A stretch of 32,000 nt of DNA from Wallemia ichthyophaga EXF-994 (GCF_000400465.1 NW_008806291.1:215925-247924); one strand, 5' to 3'. Positions 636-21,198 are shown, numbered from the stretch's first letter. Program-made: numbers and translations. The notes: generated by a model from the letters alone, not told the origin.

Positions 636-660
636 CGATGTTGGTGTACAAAACTTGGCT

Positions 661-696
661 GCGGCTGAGAGTGGCTGAGAGTGGCTGAGAGTGGCT
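661..696. repeat. 10-bp tandem repeat (GTGGCTGAGA, about 3.6 copies)
   Basis: gcggctgaga gtggctgaga gtggctgaga gtggct, inside the 65-nt gap between the prefoldin-3 stop and the ALKBH6-like ATG. Confidence 0.9.
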
Positions 697-700
697 ACTC

Positions 701-1357: not shown

Positions 1358-1401
1358 TTCAGTTGGTCGTTCTTGTCGTTGACCCAAACCACCAAACCAC
1401 C

Positions 1402-2337
1402 ATGCCGATCAATTTTCTCTTTTTTCCTCCGCTCTACTGCCCAGTCGGCATCTATCGCTTGCTCAGTGATTCCCATGTTCGATCACCCATCTACTCGCTC
1501 TGTCGTAAGGGTTTGGCCACTGGGCTCATCACAGCGAGCGTCTACGTCCTTGTTACTTATCCGATACAGAATCGCCTGCTCAGCATTTACCTCAGCTTGT
1601 TCTACAGCACTCCCTCCTCACACCGCTTCTCTACGCTGATGCTTGTCAGCACCCAATTCACCGCCATTCTCCAGTTCTTCATCAACAAGCGCATCGCTCA
1701 GTCCCGGCGTCTCGCGTACTCCCTCACCATCCAATCCCGGGCTAAAGAAAACGCTTTCTGGGGCAAATATGTCGAGGAATTCAATCTTAACACTCCAGCT
1801 GGTCGATCGCTGCAAAATGAGGCGCTTAAGCAGGCAAAAACCAGAAAATCGGGCTGGAGCGGTTTGGTTGAGGGTAGAAAGCGCTCTAAAGCCCTCGCTT
1901 TGCTAATCAAACTCCTCCTCCTCCCCGTCGACGTCATCCCTCTTGTCGGCATCGTTATAGGTGCGACTCTCCGCTCTGTCGCCCTCACCAGACGCCTCCT
2001 CAAGCCATATTTCGCCGCGAAGAATATGTCCAAGTATCAGCGAGAAGTCTTCATCCAGCAGCGCTCTTTTGAGTTGAGGTGTGAGTCAGGCTGAATACGT
2101 TTTAACCGCCCAGTAACACCCCCTCCTCTCACAGCTTTCGGCTTTGCGGCTGCCTTACTCGAACGCACACCTTTCGTTGGCCTCCTCTTCTCCATATCTA
2201 CACCCATTGCTGCCGCTATGATGGCTGTCGACTTTGAAAAACGCCAAAACTCGCTTCGTTGCGTTCATGACGCTGATAAACCTCCTTGGGGGAGTGTACA
2301 CGTCGGTCACGCTATACCTCAGAAGAAAACGACATGA
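1402..2337 (+). CDS. EI24-domain membrane protein (Lds1/Rrt8-like)
   Basis: Exons 1402-2080 and 2135-2337, 54-nt GTGAGT..CAG intron, 293 aa. Motifs YCPVGIYRLL, FWGKYVEE, IPLVGIVIGATL, LKPYFAAKNM and FGFAAALLERTPFVGLLFSI...DFEKRQ. Confidence 0.8.
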
Positions 2338-2421
2338 ATGACTAGATGAACAAGAGTGGAAATGGGTGTGTAAATGAGAGATATTAATGATATCAAGGAG
2401 TCGCCTGGAATTTGCGCACAC

Positions 2422-3480
2422 CTACTTCCTAAACAGCTTCTTCCATCCTGAGACATGTTTCGTCGCTTTGTTATCAGGCACACTAATGCCATCACTAAAA
2501 GCCATAGACATCATTGGTTCAGGAATAGGGTATGCTTTCATTTTGTCCTGTTGTTGAGCCGGTGATGATTTGGATTTATGGAGCTGCTGGTGTTGCTGTT
2601 GCTTAAATGGATCGCTCATCAAACTCTGGCTTCGATAGCGGGGTTGATCCGACTGGACCACCTCAATTGCATCGATATCACCATTACCATCCACTCCCCT
2701 CTCCCTCCTATCTTTCTCCCGCTTCTCCCTCATGGCACTCTCGCTCGCAGTCATCTCCAGCCTAGCCAGAGCATCCGAGTCGCTCTTCTCCCTCGTCTCA
2801 GCACTCCTCTTAAACTGCTCCTGCAGCGCTACCTCGCGTTCTTTCTCCTGCGCCCTCTTCGCCGCCTCTTCCTTCTCTCTGCGTATGCGCTCGCTGCGCG
2901 GTGGCTTCGCCTTGGGTTTGCGCGGGTAAACGAGCTGACCATCGGCTGTTAAAATTGGGAGCTGAGACGGTGCGTCGAACCCCCACATACCGCCGCCCGT
3001 ATCCACAGGCGCTTTTGAGTGCACCTGCTGGATGATAATTTGTGGTTGTTGGTGTGTTTTTGTGTTGCTGTTGGTCGTGTTGCTAGTCACACCGCTGAAT
3101 ATCCCACTAGACATAGCCTTGCTCGACCGCCCACTGCTACCACTGCTGATACTGCGATTCGAGCTCATCTTTGCCGCTATCTCATCCTCCCTTCTCTGTA
3201 GCTCCGCTTTGGCTCGCGCGATGCTGTAACGTGTTAGCATCCCTTTGGCCCAGATCTCAAATCACCCAACTCACTCGGCCCATTCTTTTTCTGCACTTTT
3301 TGCTTCTTCTAACTCTTGCACATCTTGTGCTTCTTCCCAGTCAGTTGTAAACTCCCTCTGATATTGTGGGCTAATAAATCCATTTCGATTCTGGTTCATC
3401 TCCCTCACTTTCTCGGTGTGATGTTGACAATTACAGATAGCGGGGTGGTAGTACGCCTTGCAGCATGACATGGCTGTCAT
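2422..3480 (-). CDS. Hypothetical 335-aa coiled-coil/low-complexity protein
   Basis: The track ORFs 3271-3480 and 2422-3240 join in frame through a 51-nt intron at 3274-3224 (GTGAGT...GCTAAC...CAG). Charged helical segments and S/Q-rich tracts; no family recognised. Confidence 0.8.
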
Positions 3481-3822
3481 TCAACTGTCAGTTCATTCTG
3501 TTTTCAGGAACCACCCTTATCTGATGCTTGACAGGTCCAAGTAAATTTTTCATTTTAGTACATTTATTCATTAAATCAGTGTATTTTAATTGCGCCTGTA
3601 TATTTGTTCTTTCTGTCAACCACCCCTCTCATTTTCTGGTGACCAGCTTTTTGGTGTTCCGACACCATGCATTACTTTGCAGTGCATTACATAGATATAT
3701 GGCAAAATCAAAGTAACGTAAAAACTTATGATAATCTAAAGATGTGATACTTTCAAGGCTACACTCAAGTTGAAAGGAAACGAAATATAATCAAAATCAG
3801 TCAATACATCAAGACATGCCAG

Positions 3823-6157: not shown

Positions 6158-6339
6158 CGCAGTTGAAATCAAGTCAAGTAAAGTGATTAAGAGTACTATT
6201 AAATCGACTAGGTAATACAAAGAACATGAAATGCTTACAAGAAACGTACAAGATCTGCTGTTTGCAATGGAGATTATTTTCTTTACATGGGAGTGCAAAG
6301 GTCGTGAGGTGAGGATCCAATTCTATACTACATTGAGGG

Positions 6340-7509
6340 CTATAAAGAATGCGGCGAGTGAGCACTAGGACGTCGTTCGCTGCTAGTAGAGGGGCTCAAA
6401 ATACCCAGACCGACGCTGTCGCTAGGGCTAGGATTAGACCCCAAGAGGCTGAAGTTGGTGTCGACGGAGAGATTCATTGGCCTTTGGCTGTGTGCCTGCG
6501 GGGTGTAGTGCGATGAGCCCAGCGATAGCGGCGATAGTGGCTGTTCCATTCTAAACCCGCCACCATACTCGGACGCATACGGCGACGAATGCGTGCTGTA
6601 GAGATCGGGTATGGGCGAGCCTGCGCTGGATGGACTTGGCGAGTAGGGATACGGAGGGATAGTGGAGTTAGCCGCGTTTGTAGCGTGTGTTGAGGTGTCT
6701 GGCGAAGTGACGAATATCGGTGGCTGGGCGGGTGGTGTGGGTTTAAGGGGAAAATGGCTATTGGTGTTACCTCCGGTGGTGGCGTTGGTGTGAGCACCAC
6801 TGCCAGTGTCCATACCATCACCACCTCCACCACTGCCACTCCAGGGGTAGTCAAACGGCAAGCCACCATGCGTACCGTAGAGAAAGGCGTAAAGCTGCTT
6901 AACGACATCCTTCAGACACTGCGTCTCGCCCCGCGAATGCTCCAGCTGCTGCTCTAGAAAGAGTACACGCTGGTTGAGGGTGGCTATGGACTGGTTGGAC
7001 TGCGACTGGCTAAGCTGGAGGAGGGCGACGGAGGAAGGGAGGTCTGTGCTACGTGCTGCGGTGCTTGTAGACGTACTGGCCTCTGCGCCGTCGAGTACCT
7101 TTCTTTTGATGTCTTCGAGCAGGTCCTTGCGCCCTCTGAGGAAGTTGGGGTGGGAGAACTCCCACACTTGGTGCTCTGGGTGTGCCTTTTGCCCGCGTGG
7201 CGTCTTGTTGCACTTATGGAAGCCATACATATTCAGCTGCCTGACAAAGGAACTGAAATTGGAGTGCTTGAAATGGGTAGGCAAGATTTCCGAAGAGAAG
7301 AGAGAGAGATTGGCAACTATAAAACTATCGCCAGCCAGATTCCACGAGATTAGATTGTTGGTGTTGGCGTCGACCATCTCGTACAGCTTCGGGACGAAAG
7401 ACGAGCTAGCGCCCTGCTTTGATTTCTTGGAAGCGTGCGGCGACTCATCATCGGATAGCACCGAATTATCCCTTTTTATCTCATTTTTGTTCGGCTGCAG
7501 GAGGTCCAT
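6340..7509 (-). CDS. HSF-type DNA-binding transcription factor (no receiver domain; Sfl1/Hms2-like rather than Skn7)
   Basis: First in-frame ATG at 7509; 389 aa. HSF domain FVPKLYEMV...ISW...F...LPTHFKHSNFSSFVRQLNMYGFHK...WEFSHPNFLRGRKDLLEDIKRK, then a coiled coil and an S/P-rich tail. Confidence 0.93.
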   Translation of the reverse strand: MDLLQPNKNEIKRDNSVLSDDESPHASKKSKQGASSSFVPKLYEMVDANTNNLISWNLAGDSFIVANLSLFSSEILPTHFKHSNFSSFVRQLNMYGFHKCNKTPRGQKAHPEHQVWEFSHPNFLRGRKDLLEDIKRKVLDGAEASTSTSTAARSTDLPSSVALLQLSQSQSNQSIATLNQRVLFLEQQLEHSRGETQCLKDVVKQLYAFLYGTHGGLPFDYPWSGSGGGGDGMDTGSGAHTNATTGGNTNSHFPLKPTPPAQPPIFVTSPDTSTHATNAANSTIPPYPYSPSPSSAGSPIPDLYSTHSSPYASEYGGGFRMEQPLSPLSLGSSHYTPQAHSQRPMNLSVDTNFSLLGSNPSPSDSVGLGILSPSTSSERRPSAHSPHSL

Positions 7510-7549
7510 GGTGGTTGGAGTAGCGAGAGTAACGCGAATAACTCGATTA

Positions 7550-7945
7550 ATGGATTTGCGGACGTGAGCGGGAGTTGAAGCGCGGGTCACACGATAACAA
7601 ACGTAACACAGCCTAGATGAGCATGTCCTAAATTATCTCAATAGGCGGGGATACTCGCAGACCGTTGAACTGCTAAAGTTGGAGGCGGGGCTCGTGGTAA
7701 ATGCCGACGATAATTTTCTATCAGAGTGGTTCCAGGTGCTAAACGAGTGCAAGCAGAGCGAGGACTTTTCAAACCACTCCACCCAAGCCAAAACCAACCA
7801 ACTCCAAGATTCGTATCAGTTGCTCGCCATCGAGCAGAGGAAATTGCACAAAACACAGTCAATTGAGCAGGATAAACTCAAGACAATAGCCAGCAGATCA
7901 TCATCCACTAATATCCCCAACCCGCACAATTTTTCAAGCGAGTGA
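7550..7945 (+). CDS. Small LisH/LUFS-like protein (~115 aa)
   Basis: Exon 7550-7563, 48-nt intron (GTGAGC...GTAAC..CAG), exon 7612-7945. Product: MDLRTLDEHVLNYLNRRGYSQTVELLKLEAGLVVNADDNFLSEWFQVL... A LisH motif is followed by FLxEW, as in Flo8/SSDP LUFS domains. Confidence 0.7.
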
Positions 7946-8399
7946 GTTGCTATTATGAGGTTTCACGGTGCGCATGTATTCTATACACTTTTGTTCTTTG
8001 TGCTTGTACTCTATGCATGGTATTTGGCCCGTATGTGATGCTCTCACGATGAAGACAATTTCTCGTGCGCCGTTCCATGCCGTCCAACGAACGTGCATCC
8101 CCCCATTGAACGTGCGCTATTAGACACTCAATTAATGCACATGATTATGGCATCAACTGAAATTCTACGCCAACTAGTGAAAGTAAATAAGTGTACTCTG
8201 CCCTCTACGTTCCTCCATTGCCAAATGCGATTCGATGGCTAGTCTGTCTTTGTTTCTCAGACAGAAAAGCTTAAAGTTCAGCTTAGTATTTGACTTATTA
8301 TTCAAACGTGTTTAAATGTTGATTTTCAACACTTGTAGATTTTGAGCAGAAATTGTGACATTCGAGGGCTTGTTTGGGTATACTCTTGCGGCTCAAGTA

Positions 8400-9901
8400 T
8401 TCTTTGAGATGGTACAAATTTCCTTAAGTTGAGCACTGCATCTCATTCGGTATTTTCACAGCTGTTCAGATTTGCAGATCGAAAATCCATTCGGTGCTGC
8501 TCTAAACAATCAGATTATCTCACAATATCAATCACGCATATTCCCACGCGTAATATCATATCCCATACAATAAGAATTGTTTCAATCAAGCAAGCATTAT
8601 TATTGAGACATTCAGAAGCACTACTCTCCCTCTTCGTCTCGAAAAGTCTCGAGCTTCCTCGAAGCTTTTTCAAGAGTGTCAAAGAAGTTAAAGAAAGACA
8701 TTCATGCATTCGATCTTGTTGGCAGCTATTTTTTGGAGCATTGGGTGGGTTTGAATAAACCTAGACAAAGCAATATCATCGACAAGATTATCTTCATTAG
8801 CCAAATTCAGCTCTTCAAGCTTGGTCATTATAAATTAAAGCAGCCTTCTTTAAAATTTTTGTAGAATTCAGAGGTGATTTGGTTTTTGACACTGAGAATT
8901 TTCACGTTTGAAAGCTTCGCATCTCTCGTGAGATTCATCATCTCATTACCTGCAGTGAGCAATGGCTCTCTCATGTCAATCTTGTGGAATTTCACTGACA
9001 GTCTCGCCCATCCTGAAATTTCACCTCCAGAAATGCAATTTAACTGCGTCAAATCTGGCAAAGAACGGTTATTGAGAGCTTTTCCAATCTTATTTGTTTT
9101 GATAGAATATAAATTAAGCATCTCGCAAGGCAAATAAAGCTTCGGACGGTTTGTTTCAGTTCCTGAGACCAGTGAATCGTCGTAAGTAACTTCAAGCGCA
9201 GTGAGATTAGGCATTAGCTTGAGTAGAAGCTGAGCGCTTCCTAACGAATGAAAATTTCTATTGCTGTGTTTTGAGCAGGGTCTTTTTAGTCTGATGAATT
9301 GGGAATTTTGGTTTCTGAATGTTTCAAGAGACTTCGCAAGTATACTCATGTCCATCAGAGTATCGCGTAGGTCTTCGCTGTAAGTTTCTGGCATGATTTG
9401 CTGCGATTCAGCTAATAAGATAAGTTTCCTGCATTTGAGATTTCTTGATATCTTGAGGTTCGAAGTCTTCCCTGATGCATCTGTATCTTCCAGAGTAAAG
9501 CGAAAATTGTAGACAAACAAAGTGGACAAACCATCTTCGTCTTCGCATAGCATTCCATAACAGTTTTTTCTAGCCATGAGTGCCAAATGACCGACTATCA
9601 GGGCATTCCTCTCAGGTGCCGACAGCGAAGCCTTGAGCTTTCTTACCTCAAAACTCCTGTCAATGAACCAGGAAGACGACGAGTAGACTTATCCAGATAC
9701 TTAGCATCTACATTGAAAGATTTTAATGTAATACTTGCCGTGATAATGAAGCATGGCTGCCCTCCAGCGCCGGTTAATCAATGACAGATACTAGATAGTC
9801 ATGACAGAGAATGTTTCAGGGCTATCCTGGACAATGAGATCGGATATTGATTGAATTAGCTCTGAGAAAAAATTGGAAGCGTTCAATTTGATAGTTGACA
9901 T
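8400..9901 (-). pseudogene. Decayed F-box/leucine-rich-repeat-like gene
   Basis: ATG at 9901: MSTIKLNASNFFSELIQSISDLIV...*YLSLINRRWRAAM (F-box-like end, in-frame TAG). Frameshifted pieces follow, including the 252-aa ORF 8828-9586 (LLLKLMPNLTALEV, SLPDLTQLNC) and MTKLEELNLANEDNLVDDIALSRFIQTHPMLQKI (RNI/LRR-like). The 3' end is approximate. Confidence 0.65.
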
Positions 9902-10055
9902 AAGATTGAATTGGTGCGAGAGTGTGAGAGTGTGAGAACGTGGAAGTACGTAAGTAGAAGTGCGAGTAAATGAGATTATCAACCGGTAAATATGGTCTGC
10001 TATACTTTAAATGACATACTTGTAATAATCACGCGTGCGCAAAATTCACCTCCAA

Positions 10056-12273
10056 TTATTGAAACATACCAGGCAATGAAGCAATCAATCCAATTACAGT
10101 ATGATGATACCTATCAAAAAATAACTGCGATCTGAGATTACCATCGTAATAAAGTGGTAGAGGACAGAGTTCATGATGCGTTGATTGTTTTTCACTTGGA
10201 TATTTTGTCATTTTCAAGATTTTCCGTTGGCCTACGATATCTCGCCAATGGTTGGCGGGCTTGGTTGAATCTGGTAAGCTGTCAATAGAATTCACTGAGT
10301 CTTTGTCGATCTAGTTGTGAGACGACTGAATGATTTGTCAAAGGTCCTTTCAAGGGGAACATGTGAAATTGACTTTGATGCGGTTCATTGCCTAAGAAAT
10401 GGATGAAGTCTGGTTGAAATTTGTAGAAAAAGAAAGATGCCCATGTCCCTGATTTGCAAATTACTATCGTAGTCAAATCATTTTCATGGCGAATACATTC
10501 TGATGAACTTCTTATAAAAATATTTTGCTTTAAACCGTTTCCCCGATTTATTATTCTCTTTTGCATAATCAACCTCTTTGATATGTGTGTTGATGAGGTG
10601 TAGATATTTAGAAAGGAGTCTACCAAAAGCTCCCTTCAAAGTTCCTTTATATGTTTTGATACGACGTTCAAAAGGAGAGAAAAGAAGTCGTCAAAGAAGC
10701 ATATTTCATTCTTTTTGATGAATTTAGATAGCCTGAAATCTCTAATTCTGAGTGACAGCAGATTCTGAAGCTTACGTAGCCTGCCGGGAACGTCATGGCC
10801 AACATATAGAACTGATTGGACACTCCTAAGCCATAGGCTTATAAAGGAAACTTATCGATAGCGTAGGATTTTTTTCCCCAGCTATAATTAAAGTTGTCTT
10901 GATCCTTGATTTGTGGCTTTGTAGTGATCTGCTTCGTGAACCGTCCAAATTAATCTTTGTTTTATCAGCGCTCAAATCCTTGAGGTTGCTTGTTCCACCT
11001 AGTGATTCTAACACGCCTGAATAAGAGCATATCAAGCCAGCTGGACTAAGAAGAGACGAGTGTTTTGTAGGTGGCGTCTCAAAATCCGCTTGTTATTTTC
11101 GGCCTTGAAAGTCTACGGTAAATACGAGATTTTCAAGCTTCTTTAATAGGGCTGGATTTGGTATGTTGATGTGCCTAATGTCATGAGGAGATGCATAAAT
11201 GTTCATAACATTAGAAAATGTGAGATAAAATGTGCTAAATAATGAAAGGGGCAGCTATTCGGTCTTTGGGTGTGGTTGAATCGGTGGCATATCATGATTG
11301 AAATCCTTGAATTATGGTAATCGGCTGATGGAAAGTTGAGACATCGAAGCAAGCAACAATATCACTTCATCTCGCTCAGCTACTTGGTAATTACAGATAT
11401 TTCAAACGACAATATCTCGCGAATGATTGACCATTCCAGTCAGTGGCACATTGTGCACGTCGTTAAAATTTGGCCAACTGAATACACCAATAAATGATTT
11501 CTGTGCATTGTTGAGCTCGATTATCATTGCTCTAATATCTGCTTCATTAAATGTTGGCTCCAACCATTTCCTGAGTCTAATGCAATCTCTTCCATTTTTG
11601 CAGACTGGTCCTTAGCTATAGATAATGTGCTTAATTCCTCTAAACCTAAGTACTTTATTATCGCGTATTTATTTGTTGATTCCATGGATGGAAATAAAAC
11701 CTCCCGGTCATCAAATCTTGTAGATATCCTGGAAACATCGAGATTAACCAGGTTCTTAAATTCCTTGACTTTTTCACGTAGCCCACCTTCTTCAACATTA
11801 ACAACAGAGGATGAATGATACTCTATAAGAAAACTCGGCGTAAATGATCTCTTTTAAAAACCTGTTTGTTAAGCAGGGCTTGAACCATCTCAGACAGTTG
11901 CTCTAAAATCTCAACGTGCTGGAATATTGACATAGTCGCCTTCTAGTCCCTAATTCTCAAGTGAATCAGTAACGATGGCAGCTTCACACTCCCTCCTATG
12001 TATCCAAATTGAGTTTTCACAATCCTCTTCAGTACGCTCGTGGTCAGTAAGATCACCTTTGAACGCTCCCGTTCCTTCTTTCTCTAAGATTCCCTAAGTA
12101 AGACTCCTAATCTGAGTCTTCCTCAAACTGAATATGTGGCTCGTACTCTGATTTAGAGTTATGGTCAGACTCATTGTTAATACAGGCTATTGCTCCAAAT
12201 CTTCTGGCTCTGTATCTGATTCCAGACTTTAAGTCTTGTTTTCAGGTGTCATCTCAATGATTTTGCGTTTCAT
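10056..12273 (-). pseudogene. Second decayed gene: acidic N-terminus, then possible F-box-like and LRR-like fragments
   Basis: ATG at 12273 gives MKRKIIEMTPENKT*SLESDTEPEDLEQ* (stops at 12231 and 12189). Protein-like fragments in shifting frames: SIFQHVEILEQLSEMVQALL, KEFKNLVNLDVSRI, ALLKKLENLVF and LRKLQNLLSLRIRDF. The 3' boundary is approximate. Confidence 0.55.
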
Positions 12274-13218
12274 AGTGGTCTGCAATTTAGCTTATAGGCG
12301 TGCCGGAAAAAAGCCAAAGAGTAGGAAAAGGATGAGAAAAGAAAAAGGAAATTGGGCTTGGTCGCATTGGTCGCAAATAATGGCTGCCTGTCACATGAAC
12401 GCAATATCTAAAACCCACTTAACGCGCACCTACACGAACTTTAGAGAATGCTCTCACCGATGACACGGCTAGGTCAAATTCCACGCAAGATACTGGTCAG
12501 ATATATCCGCGGCTGTACGAAAACGTCCAGTAGAATCGCGGCCAAAGTGCGTAGTATGCGATTGATATAGACGAATACGGAACATAATAAGAGTGGCGAC
12601 TACATATACACTCTTACGCCAGCAGGTTGAAACATGATAAGCCGATTTTTGGCAAATTTTCAACTGATTTCTGCTGCTACGCTCCTCCTACCAAGTACTT
12701 TGCCTCAATCGATGATCAAATGGCAAATAATTATAGAAGCAGACTGACTATACACAACGACTGGTCATTTCCTACATGTTCAATCACAAACATTAACCGT
12801 ACTTGTGGATCCAAGGCGTCAATTGAGCAGTAACGTCAATTTACAAACTAGCGAATCAACATTAGTCAAACACTTCAGAAGCAGTGACTTTACACGATTC
12901 TGACTTTCCCAGTCGACGTTGTGATGGCGAATTTAGGCACTTTCATCTTTTGCAGAGACTTAATATTGGTCCAGGTGTTGACGCTGTTTTTAGTGCTGAT
13001 TTATTTACTTTGACTTAATCTCTCAAATTCATTACTCAAAGTGATTATCATCGTTCATTTATGTTTAATAGGTATGATGCATATCTACTAATCCTTTTGT
13101 ATGCTGTCTTCATTAAGCTTAATACATGACAATTTACTTACACCAGTATATTTAGAAAAAACTGTAAATCATTCATAAGAAACTAACAAGAAATCCAGTG
13201 ATAAGACCACTCGTGCAT

Positions 13219-13654
13219 CTATTGAGAGAGTTCAGCAGCCTTCTTGACGAATCCTTGAAGCTGTGAGTGTTGTGAGAAAGGAACGAGAAAGAAATGAGAA
13301 GAAAAGGTCACCGACCATTGGAGGAGCAGCACCGCTAAACGAGTCCTTCTTTTCACCGTCTTTGAACAGGTAGAAAGTAGGCATAGATCTGATGGACAAG
13401 TGTTCGGCTATGTCGCCAGCTTCATCAACATCAAAAGATGCAAACTGGACCCCAGGTGTGGACTCAGCGAGTTTCTTAAATACAGGAGCAACGAGCTTGC
13501 ATGGCGCGCACCCGCATTCGCGTTTTAGCTCAATTCGGTGTGATTTTGGGCCAACTTACCAATCTGCCTCCGCTTTGATGACCGTTGGCTGGTTTGAGCC
13601 AACAAACTCCATGAATTGGTTTAATGAGCCAAGGTGGACTACTGGATCGGACAT
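13219..13654 (-). CDS. Thioredoxin (WCAPC active site); intron 1 acceptor is non-canonical
   Basis: Exons 13654-13560, 13511-13316 and 13260-13219; 110 aa. Product: ...VIKAEADWCAPCKLVAPVFKKLAE...FDVDEAGDIAEHLSIRSMPTFYLFKDGEK... Intron 1 ends in CGG instead of CAG. Confidence 0.88.
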
Positions 13655-14235
13655 GGTTGATTAATCTGCGATGGTTTGGGTTCAAGCCGTGATAAAAGAG
13701 TCAGATCACGTAATCGCAGGATAAAAAATAGACTTAAAGTGAGTGTGAGCTTTTAATTTCTACAAATCTGCTAATATAGATAAGATGGATTGATTGAAAG
13801 CGTGGTTTCATCGTCATCTGCAGTTTCGAGAGAGTTGGAGTGATGATGCAGTTGCAAGTACATCGCATAATGCAGGCGGTTGAGGTGAGATGAGAGCGAT
13901 AAATAAGAGTGCATCTTTCACGGCTCAAGCAGGGCTATGCGTCGAACGTTTTACTTTGACATTACCAGAAGTATTGCATGTCATCCGAGAAGCTGACACA
14001 AAGCGGCGGATATTGAGTGGGTCAATGATTTAGAAGTGTAGTTGGAGCGATTACATGACTTCGAAAGTAAGGGCGCTGTTGTTTTGCCGTTGATCGCGCT
14101 ATGACGTAGATGTGCATCAATAACAGAAATGGATGAGATATTCTCGCTCAAGAGAATTTGTCAAAGATCTGCATAACATGAAGCAAATTTGTATCAATCA
14201 TTAATACTCGTACATTAAATACACTGCGCTTAAAC

Positions 14236-15411
14236 TTAGAGCTTGTTCTCTGAAAGCAAGTCTGTGCAGGCCACCTTGACACGCTCGACGATTGCCTTTT
14301 CACCCTCGCGGACCCCTGCAGAAAAGTTAGATAGGCTCTAAACGGTAATGATATAAACTTGCAAACTCTTGGGTCGAAAACCTTTTTGTTTGGTTTGTCA
14401 GCTTTGTGATGGTTAGTACTTTCGTCTGAAGGGCTATGACCGTGACTAACCTCCTTCTGGGTTACCAACTTGTGTCATAAGGTAGTCCTTCTTGTTGAGA
14501 ATGTAGTCACGGTGACCACAGAGGTAAGCCCATTGGACATCAGTGTCGACGTTCATCTTGACGACACCGTTGACGACAGCAGTCTTAATTTCCTCCTTGC
14601 TGGAGCCGGAGCCACCGTGGAAGACGAGGAAGAGTGGCTTCTCGTGCTTGCTGGAGGATTGCTCACGAGCGTACTTTTGGTGGTCTCCGAGGATCTCAGG
14701 GGTGAGCTTGACGTTGCCTGGCTTGTAAACACCGTGGACATTACCGAAGGCCGCGGCGATAGAGAAGGATGGGGAGATGGCGGAGAGGGCCTGGTGGACC
14801 TTGTAGACCTGCTCTGGCTTGGTCATAAGGCTGGAGGCGTCGGCGGACTCGTTGTTGACACCGTCTTCTTCACCACCGGTGATACCGATCTCCATTTCGA
14901 GCCATTGGCCCATCTTGGCCATGCGGGAGAAGTACTTGACGCAGGTGCTGATGTTCTCCTCGTCAGACTCCTCACTCAAGTCAAGCATGTGGGAGGAGAA
15001 GAGAGGAACGCCGTTGACCTTGTAGTAAGCCTCGTCGGCATCGAGCATGCCGTCGAACCAAGGGAGGAGCTTCTTGGCGCAGTGGTCAGAGTGGAGGATA
15101 ACTGGGACACCGTAGAGAGGGGCGACGGTGCGTACGTGGTGGGCGAGAGCGACCGAGCCGGCGACAGAGGCCTGCTGCTTGTCGTTTGGAAGACCCTTAC
15201 CAGCGAGGAAGGCACCACCGCCGTTGGAAATTTGGAGAATGATTGGGGATTTGATGTCGCGTGCAGCCTCGAGGACAGCGTTGGCGACGGAGGAAGAGGT
15301 AATGTTGACGGCTGGCATGGCGTACTTGTTGGCGCGGGCGTGTTCAAACAACTTGAGGGCATCGACGCCGCTCAAGACGCCTGGTTGTACAACTGAGAGT
15401 GCTCCTGACAT
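14236..15411 (-). CDS. FBA1: Fructose-bisphosphate aldolase class II
   Basis: Exons 15411-14451, 14401-14363 and 14315-14236; 359 aa. Motifs HSDHC, SSHMLDLSEE, EMEIGITGGEEDG, AAFGNVHGVY, VFHGGSGS, KMNVDTD and DPRVWVREGE. Intron 2 is GC-AG. Confidence 0.98.
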
Positions 15412-15457
15412 AATATTTAGATGATGATGGTTTGGGAGAGAGGGGCGATGCGCTGGC

Positions 15458-15463
15458 TTTATA
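15458..15463 (-). promoter_or_regulatory. Probable TATA box of FBA1
   Basis: TATAAA on the minus strand, 46 nt upstream of the FBA1 ATG, followed by a pyrimidine-rich leader. Confidence 0.5.
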
Positions 15464-15526
15464 CTCCAAATGAAAAATAGTTGACATCAATTGGGTGAGT
15501 GGGATAATCCAATGACTTAAGAATTG

Positions 15527-15651
15527 GCGTGGGTTGGGCGTGGGTACAGCGTGGATCTGAGTGGTTGGATTGCGGTGAATATGCATACCTCATTATCGCT
15601 GCTCGCATCTGCGGTATTGAGTCTTGTTGGGGATCCACGGTGGATCCACGG
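15527..15651. repeat. 11-bp-phased CCACG-core motif arrays upstream of FBA1
   Basis: GCGTGG at 15527, 15538 and 15549; GGATCCACGG at 15631 and 15642, which also form the palindrome GGATCCAC-G-GTGGATCC. Confidence 0.7.
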
Positions 15652-15881
15652 GGATTCTTGGGATTGGTGGAGTGCGTCGATGAAATAGCCATACATACGA
15701 CCCAATTCGACCACTCAATCCGCTCATTTTAATGTCTTCCTTTTGTGAATTTGGTATTACGTCATATCCAGATAATTTCTATGACTTTCGTTGGGTTACG
15801 GGAGGTGGAAAGTAGCTTGAAGGGGAATTGCGTTGAGATTTCCATTTCGTTTGTTGTTTGACTCTTTCACATCCAATCAAA

Positions 15882-16345
15882 TGTTTAAACGGTTTGAATT
15901 GGTTGTCGTCGGTATTTCTAGCTACCCGCACGAACTGATGATGCAATATTTGAATCACAGGATTTAATCGGGAAAATATCTAATGAATGCATTCAATGTG
16001 CTCCAAACGTGCAATTAAACGTGGGTGATAATCGCTCGAACTGCCCTGAGAAAGATGAAAGAATACTTGTACATGATCACATTGAGTATGTTTATATTGG
16101 CTGTTCATGGCCGTTGATCTATGTGCTGTATTTTACCCCTTCAAATCCCCATTATACAGCATCTCAACCGTCTCAACGCGTTTCACTTTCTGTAACGCGT
16201 AGAAAGTGGTCTATAAGCAGTAAATAGGCTAACAACGTCTACATATGCAGCAGAAATAGTTTTATTGTTTAAATAAGCTGAATTGGATCCATCCAATAAA
16301 TGCAGTAAACGCGATTTTGTTGTCGGTATTTCTAGCTATCCGCGC
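15882..16345. repeat. Duplicated ~50-bp non-coding element in the FBA1/Sds3-like divergent spacer
   Basis: Identical 17-mer GTCGGTATTTCTAGCTA at 15908-15924 and 16322-16338. Each copy is preceded by TGTTTAAA-N5-TGAATTGG (15882-15902 and 16266-16286). Confidence 0.8.
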
Positions 16346-16754
16346 AAACCAACTGAATACACGGAAAGCTTTGAGGATGAGTAGCTGAGCAGATGTATTC
16401 ACGCTGTTAGCCGCGTGAACAGGAACGAGGATTGCGGATTCGTGAAACACAACAAATTCAAGGCACTAGCCACGTGCTTGTCGGCCGCTACTGTGTTATT
16501 TAAGCAGCCCACATTTCTTCCCTCATTCCCCTACGGTTCGCCGTCTTGGGAGCCTAGTAAAGCGGGTATAACCCTTTCACCGTAAATAGTCTGCGCTGCT
16601 CCCAGTAAGCTTGATTTTAACTCGTTCAACTATCTCAACCCTTCAATAAGACCTGGTATTCCGTTTAAAGTCCCCTTTGAGCGATAATCCTAGAACATTT
16701 GCTATCATCACTTGGTCTCTCTAACCTCAACCACCAAGACGAGGCAGTCCGCAG

Positions 16755-18097
16755 ATGAGCACATCAAGCCTCAGTTCACCAGAATCATCGCGCGGGAGCG
16801 ATAAGATAGTTGTAAATTTCCACGATAAGGGCGCTACCAAGGGATTTAGCGATAGCGGTTCAGAAGCCTCGACTCAACCGCTCAGCAAATCCAGCAGCGA
16901 GCTGTCGGAGCCACCCGAGGATAGAATAAAGGCGGAGGAGGCTGTGCATCCTGCCATCGCCCACGAACCCACTCTCGCTTCCGCTCTCGATCCAATCCCT
17001 TCAAACATTCCGCACGAGCTGGCTATGGATCCCCCGCCTGAAGCTGTCGCAGCGCCTACAACTGAGAAAGAGGTCGGTGCTGGTGAGGCGCTGATTGACA
17101 TGGCGGTGGATGGCGAGGCTGAGGAGGCTGAGCCGGGCGAGAAGGTTGAGGAGCAACTCGAAAAGCAGCAGCTGGACGAGGAGCAAGACCAAGACGAGGA
17201 GCAGCACCCCGCAACAAACCCGCCACCAACCGAACATGAAACACCTCAACCCCCCTCGCCCTCACCCTCACATTCACACTCACATTCGGACGAAAACACA
17301 CATGCACACACTGCCACAACGACGGGCACATCCACAGCATACCACGTCGACGACGAGCGCGAAGATGCCCTCGCCCACCTCACCAAGCTAGAGATAGAAT
17401 TTGCGATGCTGCGCAATAAGCTTTATGTGGAGCGTATGGAAGACGTAGGGCGGGAGAGTGCGATGATCGCAGATGGCACACACCCCGAATTACAGCATCT
17501 ACACACTATACTCGCTCAAAGACGCGATACACGACTCTCTCTCGCCAGCATAAGGTTGAGGAAGCTCGAGGAATCGCACAAAACCACTTTTCGCGCTGAG
17601 CAGACCGCTGCCTGGACTAACTGGGTTGAGGGCGTGAAGCAACTCCACTATGGGCAGGGTGACAAGGTCGAGAGTGGCAGCTATGGTTGGGGTGGTGGGT
17701 TGCAGGGCAACGATAGGAAGAGGAGGAGACTCGAGAGAGAAAAGGAGGCGCTCGAGGTGCCTAAAATCCTTCAACGGCCGCCCATTGCTCACCTCGCCAT
17801 CAAGGCTACTCAACAGCTCGCTTCACTCCCACCCCCTCAATCCACGGCAAGTAAAAACAAAAAACGCGGCAGATACCCGAGGAAAGACCACATCAACCAC
17901 GATAAACAGAAGGTGTCGATGAATAATTGGCACGATCTCAATTCCATGTTCGGTGAGCCGTTGAGTAGTATTGAGGATGTCCAGCTGGCGAGGCAGGCTG
18001 TGGACGAGGATATGATGGCGATGAATGTGGGTGGTGTGCGTGTGGTCGGTGCGCAACTAACCCACAGACAGGATCGACAGCAGGAACTCCACGTTGA
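16755..18097 (+). CDS. Sds3/Dep1-like Sin3-HDAC complex subunit
   Basis: LAHLTKLEIEFAMLRNKLYVERM...IADGTHPEL coiled coil typical of the Sds3 family, after an acidic N-terminus. A probable 41-nt intron at 18027-18067 (GTGGGT...CTAAC..CAG) gives a stop at 18097; unspliced, the stop is at 18152. Confidence 0.85.
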
Positions 18098-18196
18098 AAC
18101 GGAAACAGACCACAGCAGACTAATGCAATCCAGCCATCCGTCGCCGTTGTAATGTAACGAAATATATGTGATATTAGTACCCCTTGCACCTCGACA

Positions 18197-19058
18197 ATGA
18201 CGTCACGGATCAATATAAACACACACAACCAGTACAAGAGCCCGGGAGTGGTGCGCGGAATGCTATCCGGTGATGCACTGGTGCAGTTGCGGGAGGTGAG
18301 TGGCGTGTGTGTATGAGCAAACAGCGCTCACGCTCGCAGTGGTTTGACCACGCAGTGCAAAACGGCGTGGAAGAACCCGAGGCGGTGAATGTGTCTACGG
18401 TGGACAAGGCGGGCATCCCCAACGCCCGCATCGTGCTATCCAAGAGCATTAGCAGGTTAGGCGTGTCCTTCTACACCAACTACCGTTCCGCCAAGGGAAA
18501 TGAGCTAGCGAGTGTGCCGTATTGCGCCATGACGTACCACTGGCGCTATCCACACACAGACGCACACACGCACACACAACGCCAGGTCAGACTCAGAGGC
18601 AGGGTGGTTCAGGCGCCAGTGCACGAGTCGCACGCCTACTTCAATGGCAGGAGTGAGGAGTCGCGGCTGGGCGCATATGCCAGTAGACAGAGCAGCGTGC
18701 TTCCCCCGCTTAACCACGCAGATGACGGGAAACAAACGCTTTTGCAGCAGTTGAAGGCGGAAAAGGATAAATCATCCCCAATCAGTCACTCCTCGCCTGA
18801 TTTCTGGGGTGGATATATTCTAGTCCCGTTGTGAGGGCGTAATGCGTACAAAAGTATCCATCTAACGACACACACAGCCACGTCGAATTTTGGTCTGGCC
18901 AGCCGAGCAGACTGCACGACAGATTCTTGTATTCGCGTGATCCGCAAGACGTGGAGAAGGCATTGCCAGCTGATGCAGCCACGCCGATCGAGAGTGTGGA
19001 CAAGGTCGCAGACGCGGTAGAAAAGGTCCCATGGACGATAGACAGGCTTTCTCCGTAG
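18197..19058 (+). CDS. PDX3: Pyridoxamine 5'-phosphate oxidase
   Basis: Exons 18197-18295, 18340-18830 and 18878-19058; 256 aa. Motifs EPEAVNVST, PNARIVLSK, FYTNY, RQVRLRG, YFNGR..SRLGAYASRQS, FWGGY, EFWSGQPSRLHDRF and W..DRLSP. Confidence 0.95.
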
Positions 19059-19081
19059 CCTTTTTTGTGACTTTAAATGCA

Positions 19082-19516
19082 CTACATTCTTGCCAGGTAT
19101 CGCGCGCCGAATCCAATCACAGCGCCCACACACGCGCACCCGCCCAGCAACTGGTATAGCGGCAGCCACGTCAGACTGAGACTGGCCGTTGAGATAGATA
19201 CACGCGGTACGAGCAGCAGCGGGATAGCGAGCGGAGAGACGAGTGCGAGAATGACGTCAGCCAATTTAACGACGATGAGTATCAGTGTTTTGAAGAGAGC
19301 GTCAAGGAGTAGCGGGAGGCGTAGTCTGTGCACCGCTCGCACCAGCAAATACACTACACCACCCAATCCCGTGCTGTCGCCCGCGCTATCACCCGCGCTA
19401 TCACCCGCCTCTACCGCCTCGCTCACGCTGTCAGATTCCCCCGGCAGCGTCTCGAGCAGAACGCCGAGCATGCCCGTCAGGAGTGTTATTTTCAATATGC
19501 TCTTTGTTATCGTCAT
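19082..19516 (-). CDS. Hypothetical small membrane protein (~144 aa)
   Basis: Intact ORF with a hydrophobic N-terminus, an acidic GDSA-repeat linker and a long hydrophobic C-terminal half. An alternative ATG at 19567 would overlap CRIPT. Confidence 0.7.
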   Translation of the reverse strand: MTITKSILKITLLTGMLGVLLETLPGESDSVSEAVEAGDSAGDSAGDSTGLGGVVYLLVRAVHRLRLPLLLDALFKTLILIVVKLADVILALVSPLAIPLLLVPRVSISTASLSLTWLPLYQLLGGCACVGAVIGFGARYLARM

Positions 19517-19554
19517 CCGCTCCTGCTTCTCGCCGGCTGGCTTCAAGAAGCACC

Positions 19555-19881
19555 ATGGTGTGTGCAAAATGTGAAAAGAAACAGACCAAAGTGGCAGCGC
19601 CCGACCCCTTCCGCAATAAGGCCCTCGGTGCGTCAGCGTCGACGAGCAAAGCCGGCAAGACTGAAGAACGCGACGACCTCGGGAAGAACAAACTGCTGTC
19701 CAAGAACAGATACCTCCCCTACGCAGCTAAAGACGGTGGCTCTAAATGCAAGGTCTGTAAACAGGCAACTGCCAGACCAGACGCGCGATACTGCCAGAAT
19801 TGCGCTTATAAGAGGGGCAAGTGTAGTGTGTGTGGGGTGAAGCAGATGGACACTACGTATCAGAAGATGTCAGCCAAGTGA
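19555..19881 (+). CDS. CRIPT: CRIPT-family cysteine-rich protein
   Basis: MVCAKCEKK..K...PDP...NKLLSK.RY.PY...CKVCK...YCQNCAYKRGKCSVCG...DTTYQKMS; 108 aa, intronless. Confidence 0.93.
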   Translation: MVCAKCEKKQTKVAAPDPFRNKALGASASTSKAGKTEERDDLGKNKLLSKNRYLPYAAKDGGSKCKVCKQATARPDARYCQNCAYKRGKCSVCGVKQMDTTYQKMSAK

Positions 19882-19934
19882 TGTTATGTTGTGTACTTGA
19901 TATATTTATTTGAATACGGGATATGTTTTATATG

Positions 19935-21160
19935 CTATGTGCCATGTGTGATATGCCCACCTAATAACCCCCCAAACACACTCTCACCGTCCTTGTCATT
20001 CCTCTCCGCCTCCGCCTGCCTCTTCTTGCGCTTGTCCAAATCCACCTTGTCCCCCTCTTCCTGCTTGAGTCTGTGCATCGCCGTACCTTCCACCTTGCTT
20101 GGATCCTGCCACGCCTTGAGCCTCCTGTCGATATCCTGCACGCTCTCCTTATTGAGCGTGTTGCTGCTTTTGTACGTGTTGATGAGATGGACAACCCCTT
20201 CAATTGCCGTGTGTGGTGGCGGTTGTGCGTTGAAAGCGTTTCTTTTCCATTCTATGTATGCGTCTGTTAGTGTCCTGTTGGCCATAATGAAGCATCCCAA
20301 TGCGATTTGACTAGGCGAGTAAACCAACTCGGCGCAAGTGAGCCTAGACATTCTAACCAGCTGTCTAACCTCGCCAAACAACCCATCCAGCTCCTGCTGC
20401 GGGGTAGTCTGCATGCTTTGCATATCTAAATACACCCCCCACGCCGCGCGGTGTGCTGGATGTGTGGCATACTCGAACCGCAGATTCTGCGAGAGGAGAA
20501 ATTCGATATCGAGGATGCTCGAAGTGCTTATCTTGCCTTTACCAATATGCTTGGCGAAATCTGCGACGCTTACGGGTGCATTGACTGTTTTAGTAGCGAT
20601 GAAGAGGCATGTTAGCCTGCGCAGTGTGTGAGGAACGCGTATGAGCTAACTGCACAACACTCCACCCACATTACTCGCTTCGGATGTAGATCCATCACGC
20701 TGTTGAACAGGTAGACGCGCTTAATGTACGTGATGGCACTTGCTTCGACCACCTCGGGAAACTGGAAGAGGTTGCAAATAGGTTTTACCTGGCTGAGGTA
20801 GTACACGATCAGCCTATCTTCCTCGTCTGTCGAGGGTGGTGTGGTTTTTGCGGTACTTGCACTTGCGCTTGTGCTTGATTGCGAAGCTGCATTCAGCGCC
20901 TCCTCCTTCTCCCAACCCGCACGCGCTAGTGCGATAGCCTTGGCGTTGGCGCTCTCCCGGTGCTCCCGCAGCGCCGTCTCGCTAAATCGCCAGTGGCGGT
21001 ACTGCGAGCTGTCGTGGTAGAGTGGGTGTTGATGTGGTGGATGTGGATGCTCTGTGTGCGTGTCGTCGCCCGCGTCCACGCTGCCCGCCCCTTCTGCGCT
21101 ATCAAGAAGAATCATGTCATTCTTCCTATCGCCCGTGTCATTCTCGCGCATGCTATCCAT
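19935..21160 (-). CDS. CCL1: Cyclin H (TFIIH/CAK cyclin, Ccl1/Mcs2)
   Basis: Exons 21160-20670 and 20616-19935 (53-nt intron); 390 aa. Motifs LYHDSSQYRHWRFS, EASAITYIKRVYLFNSVMDLHPKRVMLTCLFIATK, EFLLSQNLRF and LVYSPSQIALGC. The exact start Met is uncertain (21160, 21151 or later). Confidence 0.92.
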
Positions 21161-21198
21161 AATGACGGTTTTGCACAACCACCGCGACGACGACCTCA

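What the first reader, a model, noticed from the sequence alone, without database searches (positions are those of the whole stretch)
1358..21198. Recurring ~40-nt head-to-head gene pairs with no room for a promoter
Seen: four of the six divergent pairs between intact genes have almost identical ATG-to-ATG spacers. They are prefoldin-3/EI24 (44 nt, 1358-1401), HSF/LisH (40 nt, 7510-7549), membrane protein/CRIPT (38 nt, 19517-19554) and cyclin H/hydrolase (38 nt, 21161-21198). A decayed fifth candidate at 27109/27142-27152 has 32-42 nt. The other two divergent spacers are 442 and 1343 nt, so the distribution is bimodal. The spacers show loose dyad symmetry (e.g. GGTTTTGCACAACC; GAGT-AACGCGAATA-ACTC; CTTCT...AGAAG). 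In the first pair the left half is T/G-rich and the right half A/C-rich, as if two ~20-nt leaders sit back to back. Inference: both transcripts start at about the same point, or their 5' UTRs overlap, so the core promoters lie inside the partner's coding sequence. This could be a distinct minimal bidirectional-initiation architecture with a fixed footprint. The starts of prefoldin-3, EI24, HSF and CRIPT are well constrained by conserved N-termini or absence of other Met codons; the cyclin H start is less so.
Basis: partly seen in the sequence, partly recalled or inferred. Interest (0 to 1): 0.8.

Follow-up and report, generated by a model that had tools for sequence, protein, structure and literature searches.

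The report
Ultra-short head-to-head gene spacers in Wallemia
In the very compact genome of the salt-loving fungus Wallemia ichthyophaga, most back-to-back gene pairs have start codons only 1-70 bases apart, so their promoters must overlap the neighbouring gene; the spacing is not a fixed 40-base module but the end state of genome compaction.

Summary
The window is the last 32 kb of Wallemia ichthyophaga EXF-994 scaffold KE007241.1, from a 9.6-Mb basidiomycete genome. Seven of the eight start codons are backed by N-terminal conservation in other Wallemia species. The two long divergent spacers (442 and 1343 nt) are real too.

A fixed ~40-nt footprint does not hold up. The same pairs in W. hederae and W. 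mellicola measure 48, 39, 1, 40 and 23 nt. Three further pairs in related loci measure 10-25, 35-67 and 22-67 nt. A distant relative has 141 nt between HSF and LisH.

Spacer sequences are not conserved. Dyad symmetry is at chance level in 13 of 15 spacers, and no motif is shared. Tandem and convergent spacers in the same region are just as short (18-130 nt).

Best reading: compaction has collapsed most intergenic DNA. Core promoters then overlap the partner's first exon or 5' intron, and leaders are short. No transcript data could be reached, so start sites are inferred. I rate it a new variant of a known kind, of moderate interest.

The parts
1358..1401 (.). 44-nt spacer between the prefoldin ATG (minus strand, 1357) and the EI24 ATG (1402)
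   Evidence: Sequence; GenBank models. Both N-termini are conserved in W. mellicola, where the spacer is 48 nt.
701..1357 (-). Prefoldin alpha-type subunit gene. Exon 1 is 1357-1304 (54 nt); intron 1 is about 1303-1254.
   Evidence: PF02996 on the annotated product. The start MS....NPRNIPAAPFV|GT is conserved between Wi and Wm. Intron bounds were read from the sequence and are inferred.
1402..2337 (+). EI24-like gene
   Evidence: PF07264 weak in Wi and unmarked in Wm. The start MP......PLY..VG.YRL is conserved.
7510..7549 (.). 40-nt spacer between the HSF ATG (minus strand, 7509) and the LisH ATG (7550)
   Evidence: Orthologous spacers: W. hederae 39, W. mellicola 1, AT-rich relative L008 141.
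6340..7509 (-). HSF-type transcription factor gene, single exon
   Evidence: PF00447, 2.5e-35. The N-terminal Met is conserved in three taxa.
7550..7945 (+). LisH-motif gene. Exon 1 is 7550-7563 (14 nt), intron 7564-7611 (48 nt), exon 2 7612-7945.
   Evidence: The spliced CDS gives 115 aa, as annotated. The same 14-nt exon 1 occurs in Wh, Wm and L008. PF08513 is weak on the Wh orthologue.
19517..19554 (.). 38-nt spacer between the small membrane protein ATG (minus strand, 19516) and the CRIPT ATG (19555)
   Evidence: The W. mellicola spacer is 40 nt with unrelated sequence. The spacer is identical in a second Wi strain.
19082..19516 (-). Small predicted membrane protein, 144 aa from Met 19516. 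GenBank starts it at 19471.
   Evidence: The N-terminal 30 residues are conserved in W. mellicola. No Pfam family.
19555..19881 (+). CRIPT gene, single exon
   Evidence: PF10235, 9.8e-25, with the domain starting at residue 11. There is no upstream in-frame ATG. The MVCAKC start is conserved in W. mellicola.
21161..21198 (.). 38-nt spacer between the cyclin H-like ATG (minus strand, 21160) and the alpha/beta-hydrolase ATG (21199)
   Evidence: The W. mellicola spacer is 23 nt. Identical in a second Wi strain.
19935..21160 (-). Cyclin H-like gene (Cyclin_N + Cyclin_C_2). Its start codon is the least certain of the eight.
   Evidence: The N-terminus is not conserved (Wi MDSMRENDTG, Wm MMTVEEVNGD). 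In-frame Met codons 4 and 16 would give spacers of 47 or 83 nt.
21199..22467 (+). Alpha/beta-hydrolase gene
   Evidence: PF00561/PF12146/PF12697. The start MT.IT..NKHLALGAASLL is conserved.
15412..16754 (.). Long divergent spacer (1343 nt), aldolase / Sds3
   Evidence: It is 1957 nt in W. mellicola.
24522..24963 (.). Long divergent spacer (442 nt), unknown 300-aa gene / aminotransferase
   Evidence: It is 394 nt in W. mellicola.
18153..18196 (.). 44-nt tandem spacer (Sds3 stop to PNPOx ATG). Shows that ~40-nt gaps are not specific to head-to-head pairs.
19059..19081 (.). 23-nt convergent spacer (PNPOx stop / membrane protein stop)
19882..19934 (.). 53-nt convergent spacer (CRIPT stop / cyclin stop)
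636..700 (.). 65-nt tandem spacer (prefoldin stop to the next gene's ATG), made mostly of 3.4 copies of GGCTGAGAGT

Best explanation
These spacers are the collapsed remains of divergent intergenic regions in a genome under strong compaction. Wallemia has 9.6-9.8 Mb, about 514-538 genes per Mb and about three quarters coding sequence.

Most head-to-head pairs have lost nearly all DNA between their start codons, leaving 1-67 nt in the Wallemia genomes sampled. What remains is little more than the two translation-start contexts and short leaders.

Initiation must therefore be directed by DNA that overlaps the partner's transcribed 5' end: its first exon and, in many of these genes, a ~50-nt intron that follows a 14-54-nt first exon. 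Transcripts most likely start in or at the edges of the spacer, giving leaders of a few tens of nt or less. Only in the tightest pairs (1-25 nt) would they start inside the partner's first exon or intron.

Because the two promoters interpenetrate, the pairs cannot be separated by rearrangement, and they persist across the genus. About 40 nt is a common but not obligatory end point.

Shown: coordinates, start codons, conservation of pairing, variable length, lack of sequence conservation, and equal shortness of other spacer types. Inferred: where transcription starts and where promoter elements lie.
For: - Identity and compactness.
- Starts validated by cross-species N-termini.
- Short spacers for the same pairs in other species (nt):
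  - prefoldin/EI24: 44, 48
  - HSF/LisH: 40, 39, 1
  - membrane protein/CRIPT: 38, 40
  - cyclin H/hydrolase: 38, 23
  - 636aa/YEATS: 11, 25, 25, 10, 21
  - UCH/59aa: 60, 67, 35
  - UAA/CCDC90: 40, 67, and 22 or 61

- Stepwise shrinkage of HSF/LisH from 141 nt in a distant relative to 40/39 and then 1 nt.
- Seven of nine distinct divergent pairs are 67 nt or less. The two long ones stay long in both species.
- Tandem and convergent spacers are 18-130 nt in the same regions. Six genes at 16755-22467 are separated by 44, 23, 38, 53 and 38 nt.
- Spacers show small tandem duplications, which points to neutral turnover.
- Upstream ATGs are not depleted. The median distance to the nearest one is 55 nt against 42-51 nt expected, and 12 of 24 genes with spacers of 30 nt or more have an ATG inside the spacer or at the partner's CATG. 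This fits short leaders confined to the spacer. The 10-25-nt YEATS pair has ATG-free runs of 63-250 nt, which fits leaders reaching into the partner.
- HSF/LisH stays paired where flanking synteny breaks.
- A similarly gene-dense Malassezia locus has divergent spacers of 188-444 nt. The fungal mean is 1343 nt (PMC2871058).
Against: - No transcript 5' ends were available, so the initiation geometry is inference.
- The sample is only three or four ~20-kb loci per genome, not genome-wide.
- Values do cluster somewhat around 35-48 nt (10 of 20 short-spacer values). Two pairs keep their length (38/40 and 44/48) while their sequence is unrelated or not detectably similar, which pure neutral collapse does not predict.
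- Upstream ATGs are only a weak proxy for leader length.
- Spacer G+C is near the genome average, not A+T-rich as in typical fungal nucleosome-free promoters, so the promoter logic is unknown.
Confidence: 0.6

Rival explanations
1. One reading: a dedicated minimal bidirectional initiation module with a fixed footprint of about 40 nt, in which two ~20-nt leaders sit back to back around a single shared initiation point.
For: - All four window pairs lie within 38-44 nt.
- W. hederae HSF/LisH is 39 nt; W. mellicola membrane protein/CRIPT and UAA/CCDC90 are 40 nt; EI24/prefoldin is 48 nt.
- Length is kept at 38/40 although the sequences are unrelated.
- Nominal enrichment of the 38-44-nt bin among divergent spacers in the window, P about 0.02, post hoc.
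Against: - Orthologous or additional pairs measure 1, 10, 11, 21, 23, 25, 25, 35, 60, 67 and 141 nt.
- Only 3 of 16 values outside the window fall in 38-44 nt.
- There is no shared motif. CCACC occurs in 4 of 12 Wi, 2 of 8 Wh and 0 of 14 Wm leaders.
- Dyads are at chance.
- Tandem and convergent spacers of 23-53 nt sit in the same cluster.
Confidence: 0.12
2. Ordinary promoters lie deep inside the partner gene. Each gene starts 100 nt or more upstream of its ATG, within the partner's body, so the two mRNAs have long, antisense-overlapping 5' leaders. The spacer length then has no meaning for initiation.
For: - Transcripts that initiate in upstream genes are documented in compacted microsporidian genomes (PMC3629993).
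- The 636aa/YEATS pair lacks upstream ATGs for 63-250 nt on both strands in three species.
- With spacers of 1-11 nt, at least some overlap or near-leaderless initiation is unavoidable.
Against: - Across 34 genes, upstream ATGs are not depleted relative to random positions.
- Half of the genes with spacers of 30 nt or more have an ATG within the spacer or at the partner's CATG. Long leaders would carry these as upstream start codons.
- This evidence is indirect.
Confidence: 0.2
3. Annotation artefact: the start codons are called too far upstream, so the true spacers are much longer.
For: - The models come from an ab initio predictor, GeneMark-ES.
- GenBank itself puts the membrane protein start 45 nt further in.
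- The cyclin H N-terminus is not conserved.
- The W. mellicola CRIPT model is wrongly extended.
Against: - Initiator Met and the adjacent residues are conserved between species whose DNA in the aligned coding stretches is only about 64-79% identical, for 7 of the 8 window genes and for YEATS, 636aa, 59aa and UAA.
- The CRIPT and HSF domains begin 10 and 37 residues after the Met.
- LisH has no alternative in-frame ATG and keeps a 14-nt exon 1 in four taxa.
Confidence: 0.04

Closest known systems
Bidirectional (head-to-head) promoters of divergent gene pairs in mammals and fungi
   Same: Divergent orientation and a short shared upstream region. Pairs are conserved in evolution, plausibly because overlapping promoter elements prevent separation (PMC2871058).
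   Different: The classical definition allows up to 1000 bp between genes, and the human peak lies at 100-1000 nt. The mean fungal divergent spacer is 1343 nt. Here the start codons themselves are 1-67 nt apart, so two separate pre-initiation complexes cannot sit side by side between the genes. That last step is inference from general knowledge of complex footprints.
Overlapping transcription and ultra-short leaders in compacted eukaryotic genomes (microsporidia such as Encephalitozoon cuniculi; nucleomorphs)
   Same: Intergenic DNA is reduced to tens of nt in all orientations. Signals for one gene necessarily lie in its neighbour. E. cuniculi has 5' UTRs under 7 nt and transcripts that start in upstream genes (PMC2803860; PMC3629993).
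   Different: Wallemia is a free-living basidiomycete with a normal intron load of 2.41 per gene. Its spacer distribution is mixed: hyper-compact clusters sit next to gaps of 0.4-5 kb. The microsporidian CCC-like motif before the ATG is not general here. Transcript overlap has not been shown for Wallemia.
Giardia lamblia minimal, inherently bidirectional promoters
   Same: Very short promoter regions that can fire in both directions from degenerate elements (PMC1885649).
   Different: Giardia elements are A+T-rich, and the antisense product is usually sterile. Wallemia spacers have average G+C, and both directions encode conserved proteins.
Paramecium macronuclear genome (highly compact)
   Same: Very short intergenic regions, with start-start gene pairs treated as bidirectional promoters (PMC8997361).
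   Different: In Paramecium, bidirectional pairs tend to have longer intergenic distances than other configurations. In the Wallemia sample, divergent spacers are among the shortest.

Membership tests
Bidirectional promoter / head-to-head gene pair | Two adjacent protein-coding genes on opposite strands, transcribed away from each other | tested here: met
   Gene tables and sequences.
Bidirectional promoter / head-to-head gene pair | Less than 1000 bp between the two genes (strictly, between their transcription start sites) | tested here: met
   ATG-ATG distances are 1-67 nt. Start sites themselves are unmapped.
Bidirectional promoter / head-to-head gene pair | Pairing conserved across species | tested here: met
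   All seven short pairs were found head to head in every genome where their locus could be read, 2 to 5 taxa per pair.
Bidirectional promoter / head-to-head gene pair | Shared cis-elements and co-regulated expression of the partners | not testable with these tools
   No expression or start-site data could be reached. No shared motif was seen in the spacers.
Compacted-genome overlapping transcription (microsporidian / nucleomorph type) | Intergenic spacers of tens of nt in all gene orientations | tested here: met
   Tandem spacers 18-134 nt, convergent 23-132 nt and divergent 1-67 nt in the dense clusters. Gaps of 0.3-5 kb occur elsewhere.
Compacted-genome overlapping transcription (microsporidian / nucleomorph type) | Transcripts that start in the upstream gene or end in the downstream gene | not testable with these tools
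   No RNA-derived contigs were found for these genes.
Compacted-genome overlapping transcription (microsporidian / nucleomorph type) | Strongly reduced 5' UTRs | tested here: inconclusive
   Upstream ATG positions fit leaders confined to the spacers in about half of the genes, but this is indirect.
Compacted-genome overlapping transcription (microsporidian / nucleomorph type) | Conserved C-rich (CCC-like) signal immediately upstream of the start codon | tested here: not met
   CCC or CCACC occurs within 20 nt of the ATG in 4 of 12 Wi, 4 of 8 Wh, 0 of 14 Wm and 0 of 4 distant-relative genes.
   Observed values are 1, 10, 11, 21, 23, 25, 25, 35, 38, 38, 39, 40, 40, 40, 44, 48, 60, 67, 67 and 141 nt.
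   13 of 15 spacers do not exceed shuffled controls, and the exceptions are not conserved.

The most novel reading that the evidence does not exclude
Wallemiomycetes may have a genome-wide class, perhaps the majority, of head-to-head genes whose start codons lie 1-70 nt apart. Both would be expressed from one shared initiation region too small for two separate pre-initiation complexes. That would be a true minimal bidirectional core promoter, embedded in first exons and 5' introns, with a soft preferred spacing near 40 nt that selection maintains even as the sequence turns over.
Probability: 0.25. Interest if true: 0.65.

Novelty: new variant of a known kind. Interest (0 to 1): 0.45.

Why it matters
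If the pattern holds genome-wide, Wallemia would be a free-living, culturable fungus in which most divergent promoters are squeezed into less DNA than one pre-initiation complex covers. That would make it a natural system for three questions: how little DNA RNA polymerase II needs to start in two directions, how coding sequence and 5' introns double as promoter, and how promoter interpenetration locks gene order.

There is also a practical point. Start-codon calls in Wallemia annotations are inconsistent: one is wrong in W. ichthyophaga, and one model is wrong and two genes are missing in W. mellicola at these loci alone. Any genome-wide statistic needs curated starts first.

Tried and rejected
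- **Transcript evidence.** Exact-protein look-ups for CRIPT, HSF and the orthologues returned only genomic contigs.
- **Genome-wide histogram.** This was not possible. Only loci reachable through three homologue searches could be read, and the first of these was wasted on an E-value cut-off that was too strict.
- **Dyad symmetry, shared motif, strand composition.** No general signal.
- **Conservation footprint around the 636aa/YEATS spacer.** In four species the first exons are conserved and the spacer is not. The data are too thin to separate promoter constraint from protein constraint.
- **Within-species variation.** The spacers are identical in a strain that differs by 1.5% overall, which is uninformative.
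- **The 'fifth pair'.** No Pfam hit for the 116-codon ORF and no tblastx similarity of the region to W. mellicola.
- **RNA genes.** No tRNA or Rfam family anywhere in the window.
- **Literature.** Searches on Wallemia with bidirectional promoters or intergenic compaction found nothing specific.
- **Annotation artefact.** Rejected as the explanation, because the initiator Met and N-termini are conserved across species.


Full report
**Source of the window.** The CRIPT protein encoded at 19555-19881 is found exactly on NCBI assembly GCA_000400465.1, scaffold KE007241.1 (247,924 bp). A paper identifies that assembly as Wallemia ichthyophaga EXF-994. From the coordinates, the window is the last 32 kb of the scaffold.

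The published genome is 9.6 Mb with 4884 GeneMark-ES gene models. It has 514 genes per Mb, about three quarters coding sequence, and 2.41 introns per gene averaging 61 bp (PMC3849046). Two look-ups supplied the GenBank gene table for the whole window.

**Check of the observation.** GenBank agrees on both starts for three pairs.

For the small membrane protein GenBank uses Met 19471, which would give an 83-nt spacer. In W. mellicola the unannotated orthologue begins MSFTRTTVKIVLITCMVGVLIETLPGDSDS, against MTITKSILKITLLTGMLGVLLETLPGESDS in the window.

Cross-species conservation of the initiator Met and the following residues also supports these starts:
- prefoldin (MS....NPRNIPAAPFV)
- EI24 (MP......PLY..VG.YRL)
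- HSF (MD..LL.P in three taxa)
- CRIPT (MVCAKC)
- the hydrolase (MT.IT..NKHLALGAASLL)
- LisH

LisH is a special case. Its ATG lies in a 14-nt first exon followed by a 48-nt intron. The same 14-nt exon 1 recurs in W. hederae, W. mellicola and a distant metagenomic relative. Only the cyclin H N-terminus is not conserved. The other two divergent spacers, 1343 and 442 nt, are correct.

**Sub-claims that fail.** Dyad symmetry is no better than shuffled sequence in 13 of 15 spacers, and the two exceptions are not shared by orthologues. The T/G versus A/C asymmetry is strong only in pair 1. Pooled over all leaders, the sense strand is A 30, C 26, G 19, T 24 %, with A at -3 in 16 of 30, which is an ordinary start-codon context.

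The 'decayed fifth pair' consists of a 43-codon thioredoxin-like remnant starting with TTG and a 116-codon ORF. That ORF has no family match, and the region has no tblastx counterpart in the W. mellicola stretch compared. It cannot be counted.

**Related genomes.** Orthologous loci were read from:
- W. mellicola (L004; L005-L007)
- W. hederae (L010)
- a second W. ichthyophaga strain (L009)
- an unnamed Wallemia from a Logan assembly (L012)
- an A+T-rich metagenomic relative (L008, L013)

W. mellicola DNA is only about 64-79% identical to the window in the coding stretches that align.

ATG-ATG distances in nt (Wi = W. ichthyophaga, Wh = W. hederae, Wx = unnamed Wallemia, Wm = W. mellicola):

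| Pair | Distances |
|---|---|
| prefoldin/EI24 | Wi 44, Wm 48 |
| HSF/LisH | Wi 40, Wh 39, Wm 1, distant relative 141 |
| membrane protein/CRIPT | Wi 38, Wm 40 (unrelated sequence; in Wm three copies of a 10-mer) |
| cyclin H/hydrolase | Wi 38, Wm 23 |
| 636aa/YEATS | Wi 11, Wh 25, Wx 25, Wm 10, distant relative 21 |
| UCH/59aa | Wi 60, Wh 67, Wm 35 |
| UAA/CCDC90 | Wm 40, Wh 67 (tentative), Wx 22 or 61 |
| aldolase/Sds3 (long) | Wi 1343, Wm 1957 |
| unknown/aminotransferase (long) | Wi 442, Wm 394 |

For HSF/LisH in W. mellicola the sequence reads CATCATG, and a second in-frame ATG would make the two coding sequences overlap by 2 nt.

Seven of nine distinct divergent pairs belong to a short class of 67 nt or less, so the bimodality is real and conserved. 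Within the short class, however, length runs continuously from 1 to 67 nt and drifts between orthologues. In data not used to form the hypothesis, 3 of 16 short-class values fall in 38-44 nt. A fixed footprint is not supported.

**Other orientations.** Short spacers are not special to head-to-head pairs. In the window, six genes between 16755 and 22467 are separated by 44 (tandem), 23 (convergent), 38 (divergent), 53 (convergent) and 38 nt (divergent). In W. mellicola a tandem pair is 18 nt apart, and convergent pairs are 29-38 nt apart.

The mean of the 18 spacers in and beside the window is about 550 nt. This matches what genome size, gene number and coding fraction predict, so the window looks representative in the mean (inference).

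A Malassezia locus of similar gene density shows divergent spacers of 208, 188 and 444 nt. The mean fungal divergent spacer in a 64-species survey is 1343 nt (PMC2871058). The Wallemia values are therefore about ten-fold tighter than those of another compact basidiomycete, although that comparison rests on only three Malassezia pairs.

**Where transcription might start.** No transcript data could be reached, so I used indirect tests.

Upstream ATGs on the sense strand are not depleted. The median distance to the nearest one is 55 nt, against 42-51 nt for random positions. In 12 of 24 genes with spacers of 30 nt or more, an ATG lies inside the spacer or at the partner's palindromic CATG. This argues against leaders that routinely run far into the partner, and for short leaders that fit the spacer.

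The 10-25-nt 636aa/YEATS pair is the exception. It has ATG-free runs of 63-250 nt on both strands in three species, as expected if its leaders extend into the partner's first exon and intron.

Many of these genes have a very short first exon followed by a ~50-nt intron. First-exon lengths are:
- LisH: 14 nt
- 59aa: 18-21 nt
- YEATS: 24-36 nt
- 636aa: about 48-51 nt
- prefoldin: 54 nt
- W. mellicola CRIPT: 16 nt

Unconstrained DNA therefore lies within about 100 nt of the partner's ATG and could carry promoter elements. This is an idea, not a result.

Spacer G+C is near the genome average, and no motif is shared. CCACC precedes the ATG in some W. ichthyophaga and W. hederae genes but in none of 14 W. 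mellicola genes.

**Best explanation (confidence 0.6).** Compaction has collapsed most intergenic DNA in all orientations. In head-to-head pairs, what remains is the two start contexts with short leaders. Core promoter function overlaps the partner's 5' exon or intron, and the resulting interpenetration keeps the pairs together. HSF/LisH, for example, stays paired where flanking synteny breaks. The HSF/LisH series of 141, then 40/39, then 1 nt shows the direction of change.

Rivals:
It is kept alive by the mild clustering at 35-48 nt and by length retention without sequence retention in two pairs.
- Long antisense-overlapping leaders from promoters deep in the partner (0.2).
- Annotation artefact (0.04).

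**Comparison with known systems.** The arrangement works like a bidirectional promoter taken to the extreme. It also resembles the overlapping, short-leader transcription of microsporidia and nucleomorphs (PMC2803860, PMC3629993; nucleomorphs from my own knowledge of the literature). Giardia's minimal bidirectional promoters are a further parallel (PMC1885649). In Paramecium, by contrast, bidirectional pairs have the longer spacers (PMC8997361).

Membership in the 'head-to-head pair' class is met on orientation, distance and conservation. Shared regulation and transcript overlap could not be tested. The microsporidian C-rich signal is not met. Literature searches found no description of this feature in Wallemia.

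**Verdict.** The core observation is real. The inference that there is no room for a promoter is sound. The fixed-footprint architecture is not supported. I rate this a new variant of a known kind, with interest 0.45. Interest would rise if a genome-wide histogram and start-site mapping showed a true shared initiation region.

Noticed in passing
window 7946-13218: A 5.3-kb stretch with no annotated gene and low G+C (38-41% against about 50% in the flanks). It lies exactly where synteny with W. mellicola and W. hederae breaks: there LisH is followed by a 211-codon ORF and UCH. The longest ORF is 252 codons, and there is no Pfam, tRNA or Rfam hit. It could be decayed sequence at a rearrangement breakpoint.
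   Followed up: partly
window 19471-19516: The GenBank model of the small membrane protein probably starts 15 codons too late. The upstream Met 19516 and the residues after it are conserved in W. mellicola.
   Followed up: yes
L004 10001-10087 (W. mellicola JH668230.1): The JGI/NCBI CRIPT model (P0001, 125 aa) has a spurious 29-codon N-terminal extension. It reads through the spacer into the antisense of the neighbouring gene. The membrane protein gene and the LisH gene are not annotated in the W. mellicola assemblies examined.
   Followed up: partly
window 663-696; L004 10058-10087; window 1382-1401: Spacers contain small tandem duplications. The 65-nt prefoldin-downstream spacer has 3.4 copies of GGCTGAGAGT. 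The W. mellicola CRIPT spacer is built of three copies of gactatcaRc. The EI24 leader has CCAAACCA twice. This suggests spacer length turns over by replication slippage.
   Followed up: no
window 7550-7611; L010 15574-15516; L007 9999-9938; L008 2285-2222: The LisH gene keeps a 14-nt first exon and a 45-50-nt first intron in four taxa, while the upstream spacer varies from 1 to 141 nt.
   Followed up: partly
L007 9997-10003: In W. mellicola the LisH and HSF start codons are arranged as CATCATG. They are 1 nt apart, or overlap by 2 nt if the first of LisH's two in-frame ATGs is used.
   Followed up: partly
window 14180-14387; L004 2586-2812, 2973-3129, 3167-3398, 3649 onward: A ~200-nt segment at the 3' side of the aldolase gene is present four times in W. 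mellicola. The W. ichthyophaga aldolase model (446 aa) also carries a thioredoxin domain hit, which suggests a fused or mis-joined model.
   Followed up: no
window 26978-27109 (minus strand): A 43-codon thioredoxin-like remnant (…VLCYAFENWVDYCGPLDRT) that starts with TTG and has no ATG. Intact thioredoxin genes lie downstream of the aminotransferase in W. mellicola.
   Followed up: partly
window 19368-19408: A 12-nt repeat (CCCGCGCTATCA, 3.4 copies) lies inside the membrane protein coding region. A second W. ichthyophaga strain encodes a product 4 residues shorter (140 against 144 aa).
   Followed up: no
L010 15575-15582; L007 2109-2116: Two-codon upstream ORFs (ATGGAATAA, ATGATATGA) abut or overlap the main ATG of W. 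hederae LisH and W. mellicola UAA. They would matter only if the leaders span the whole spacer.
   Followed up: no
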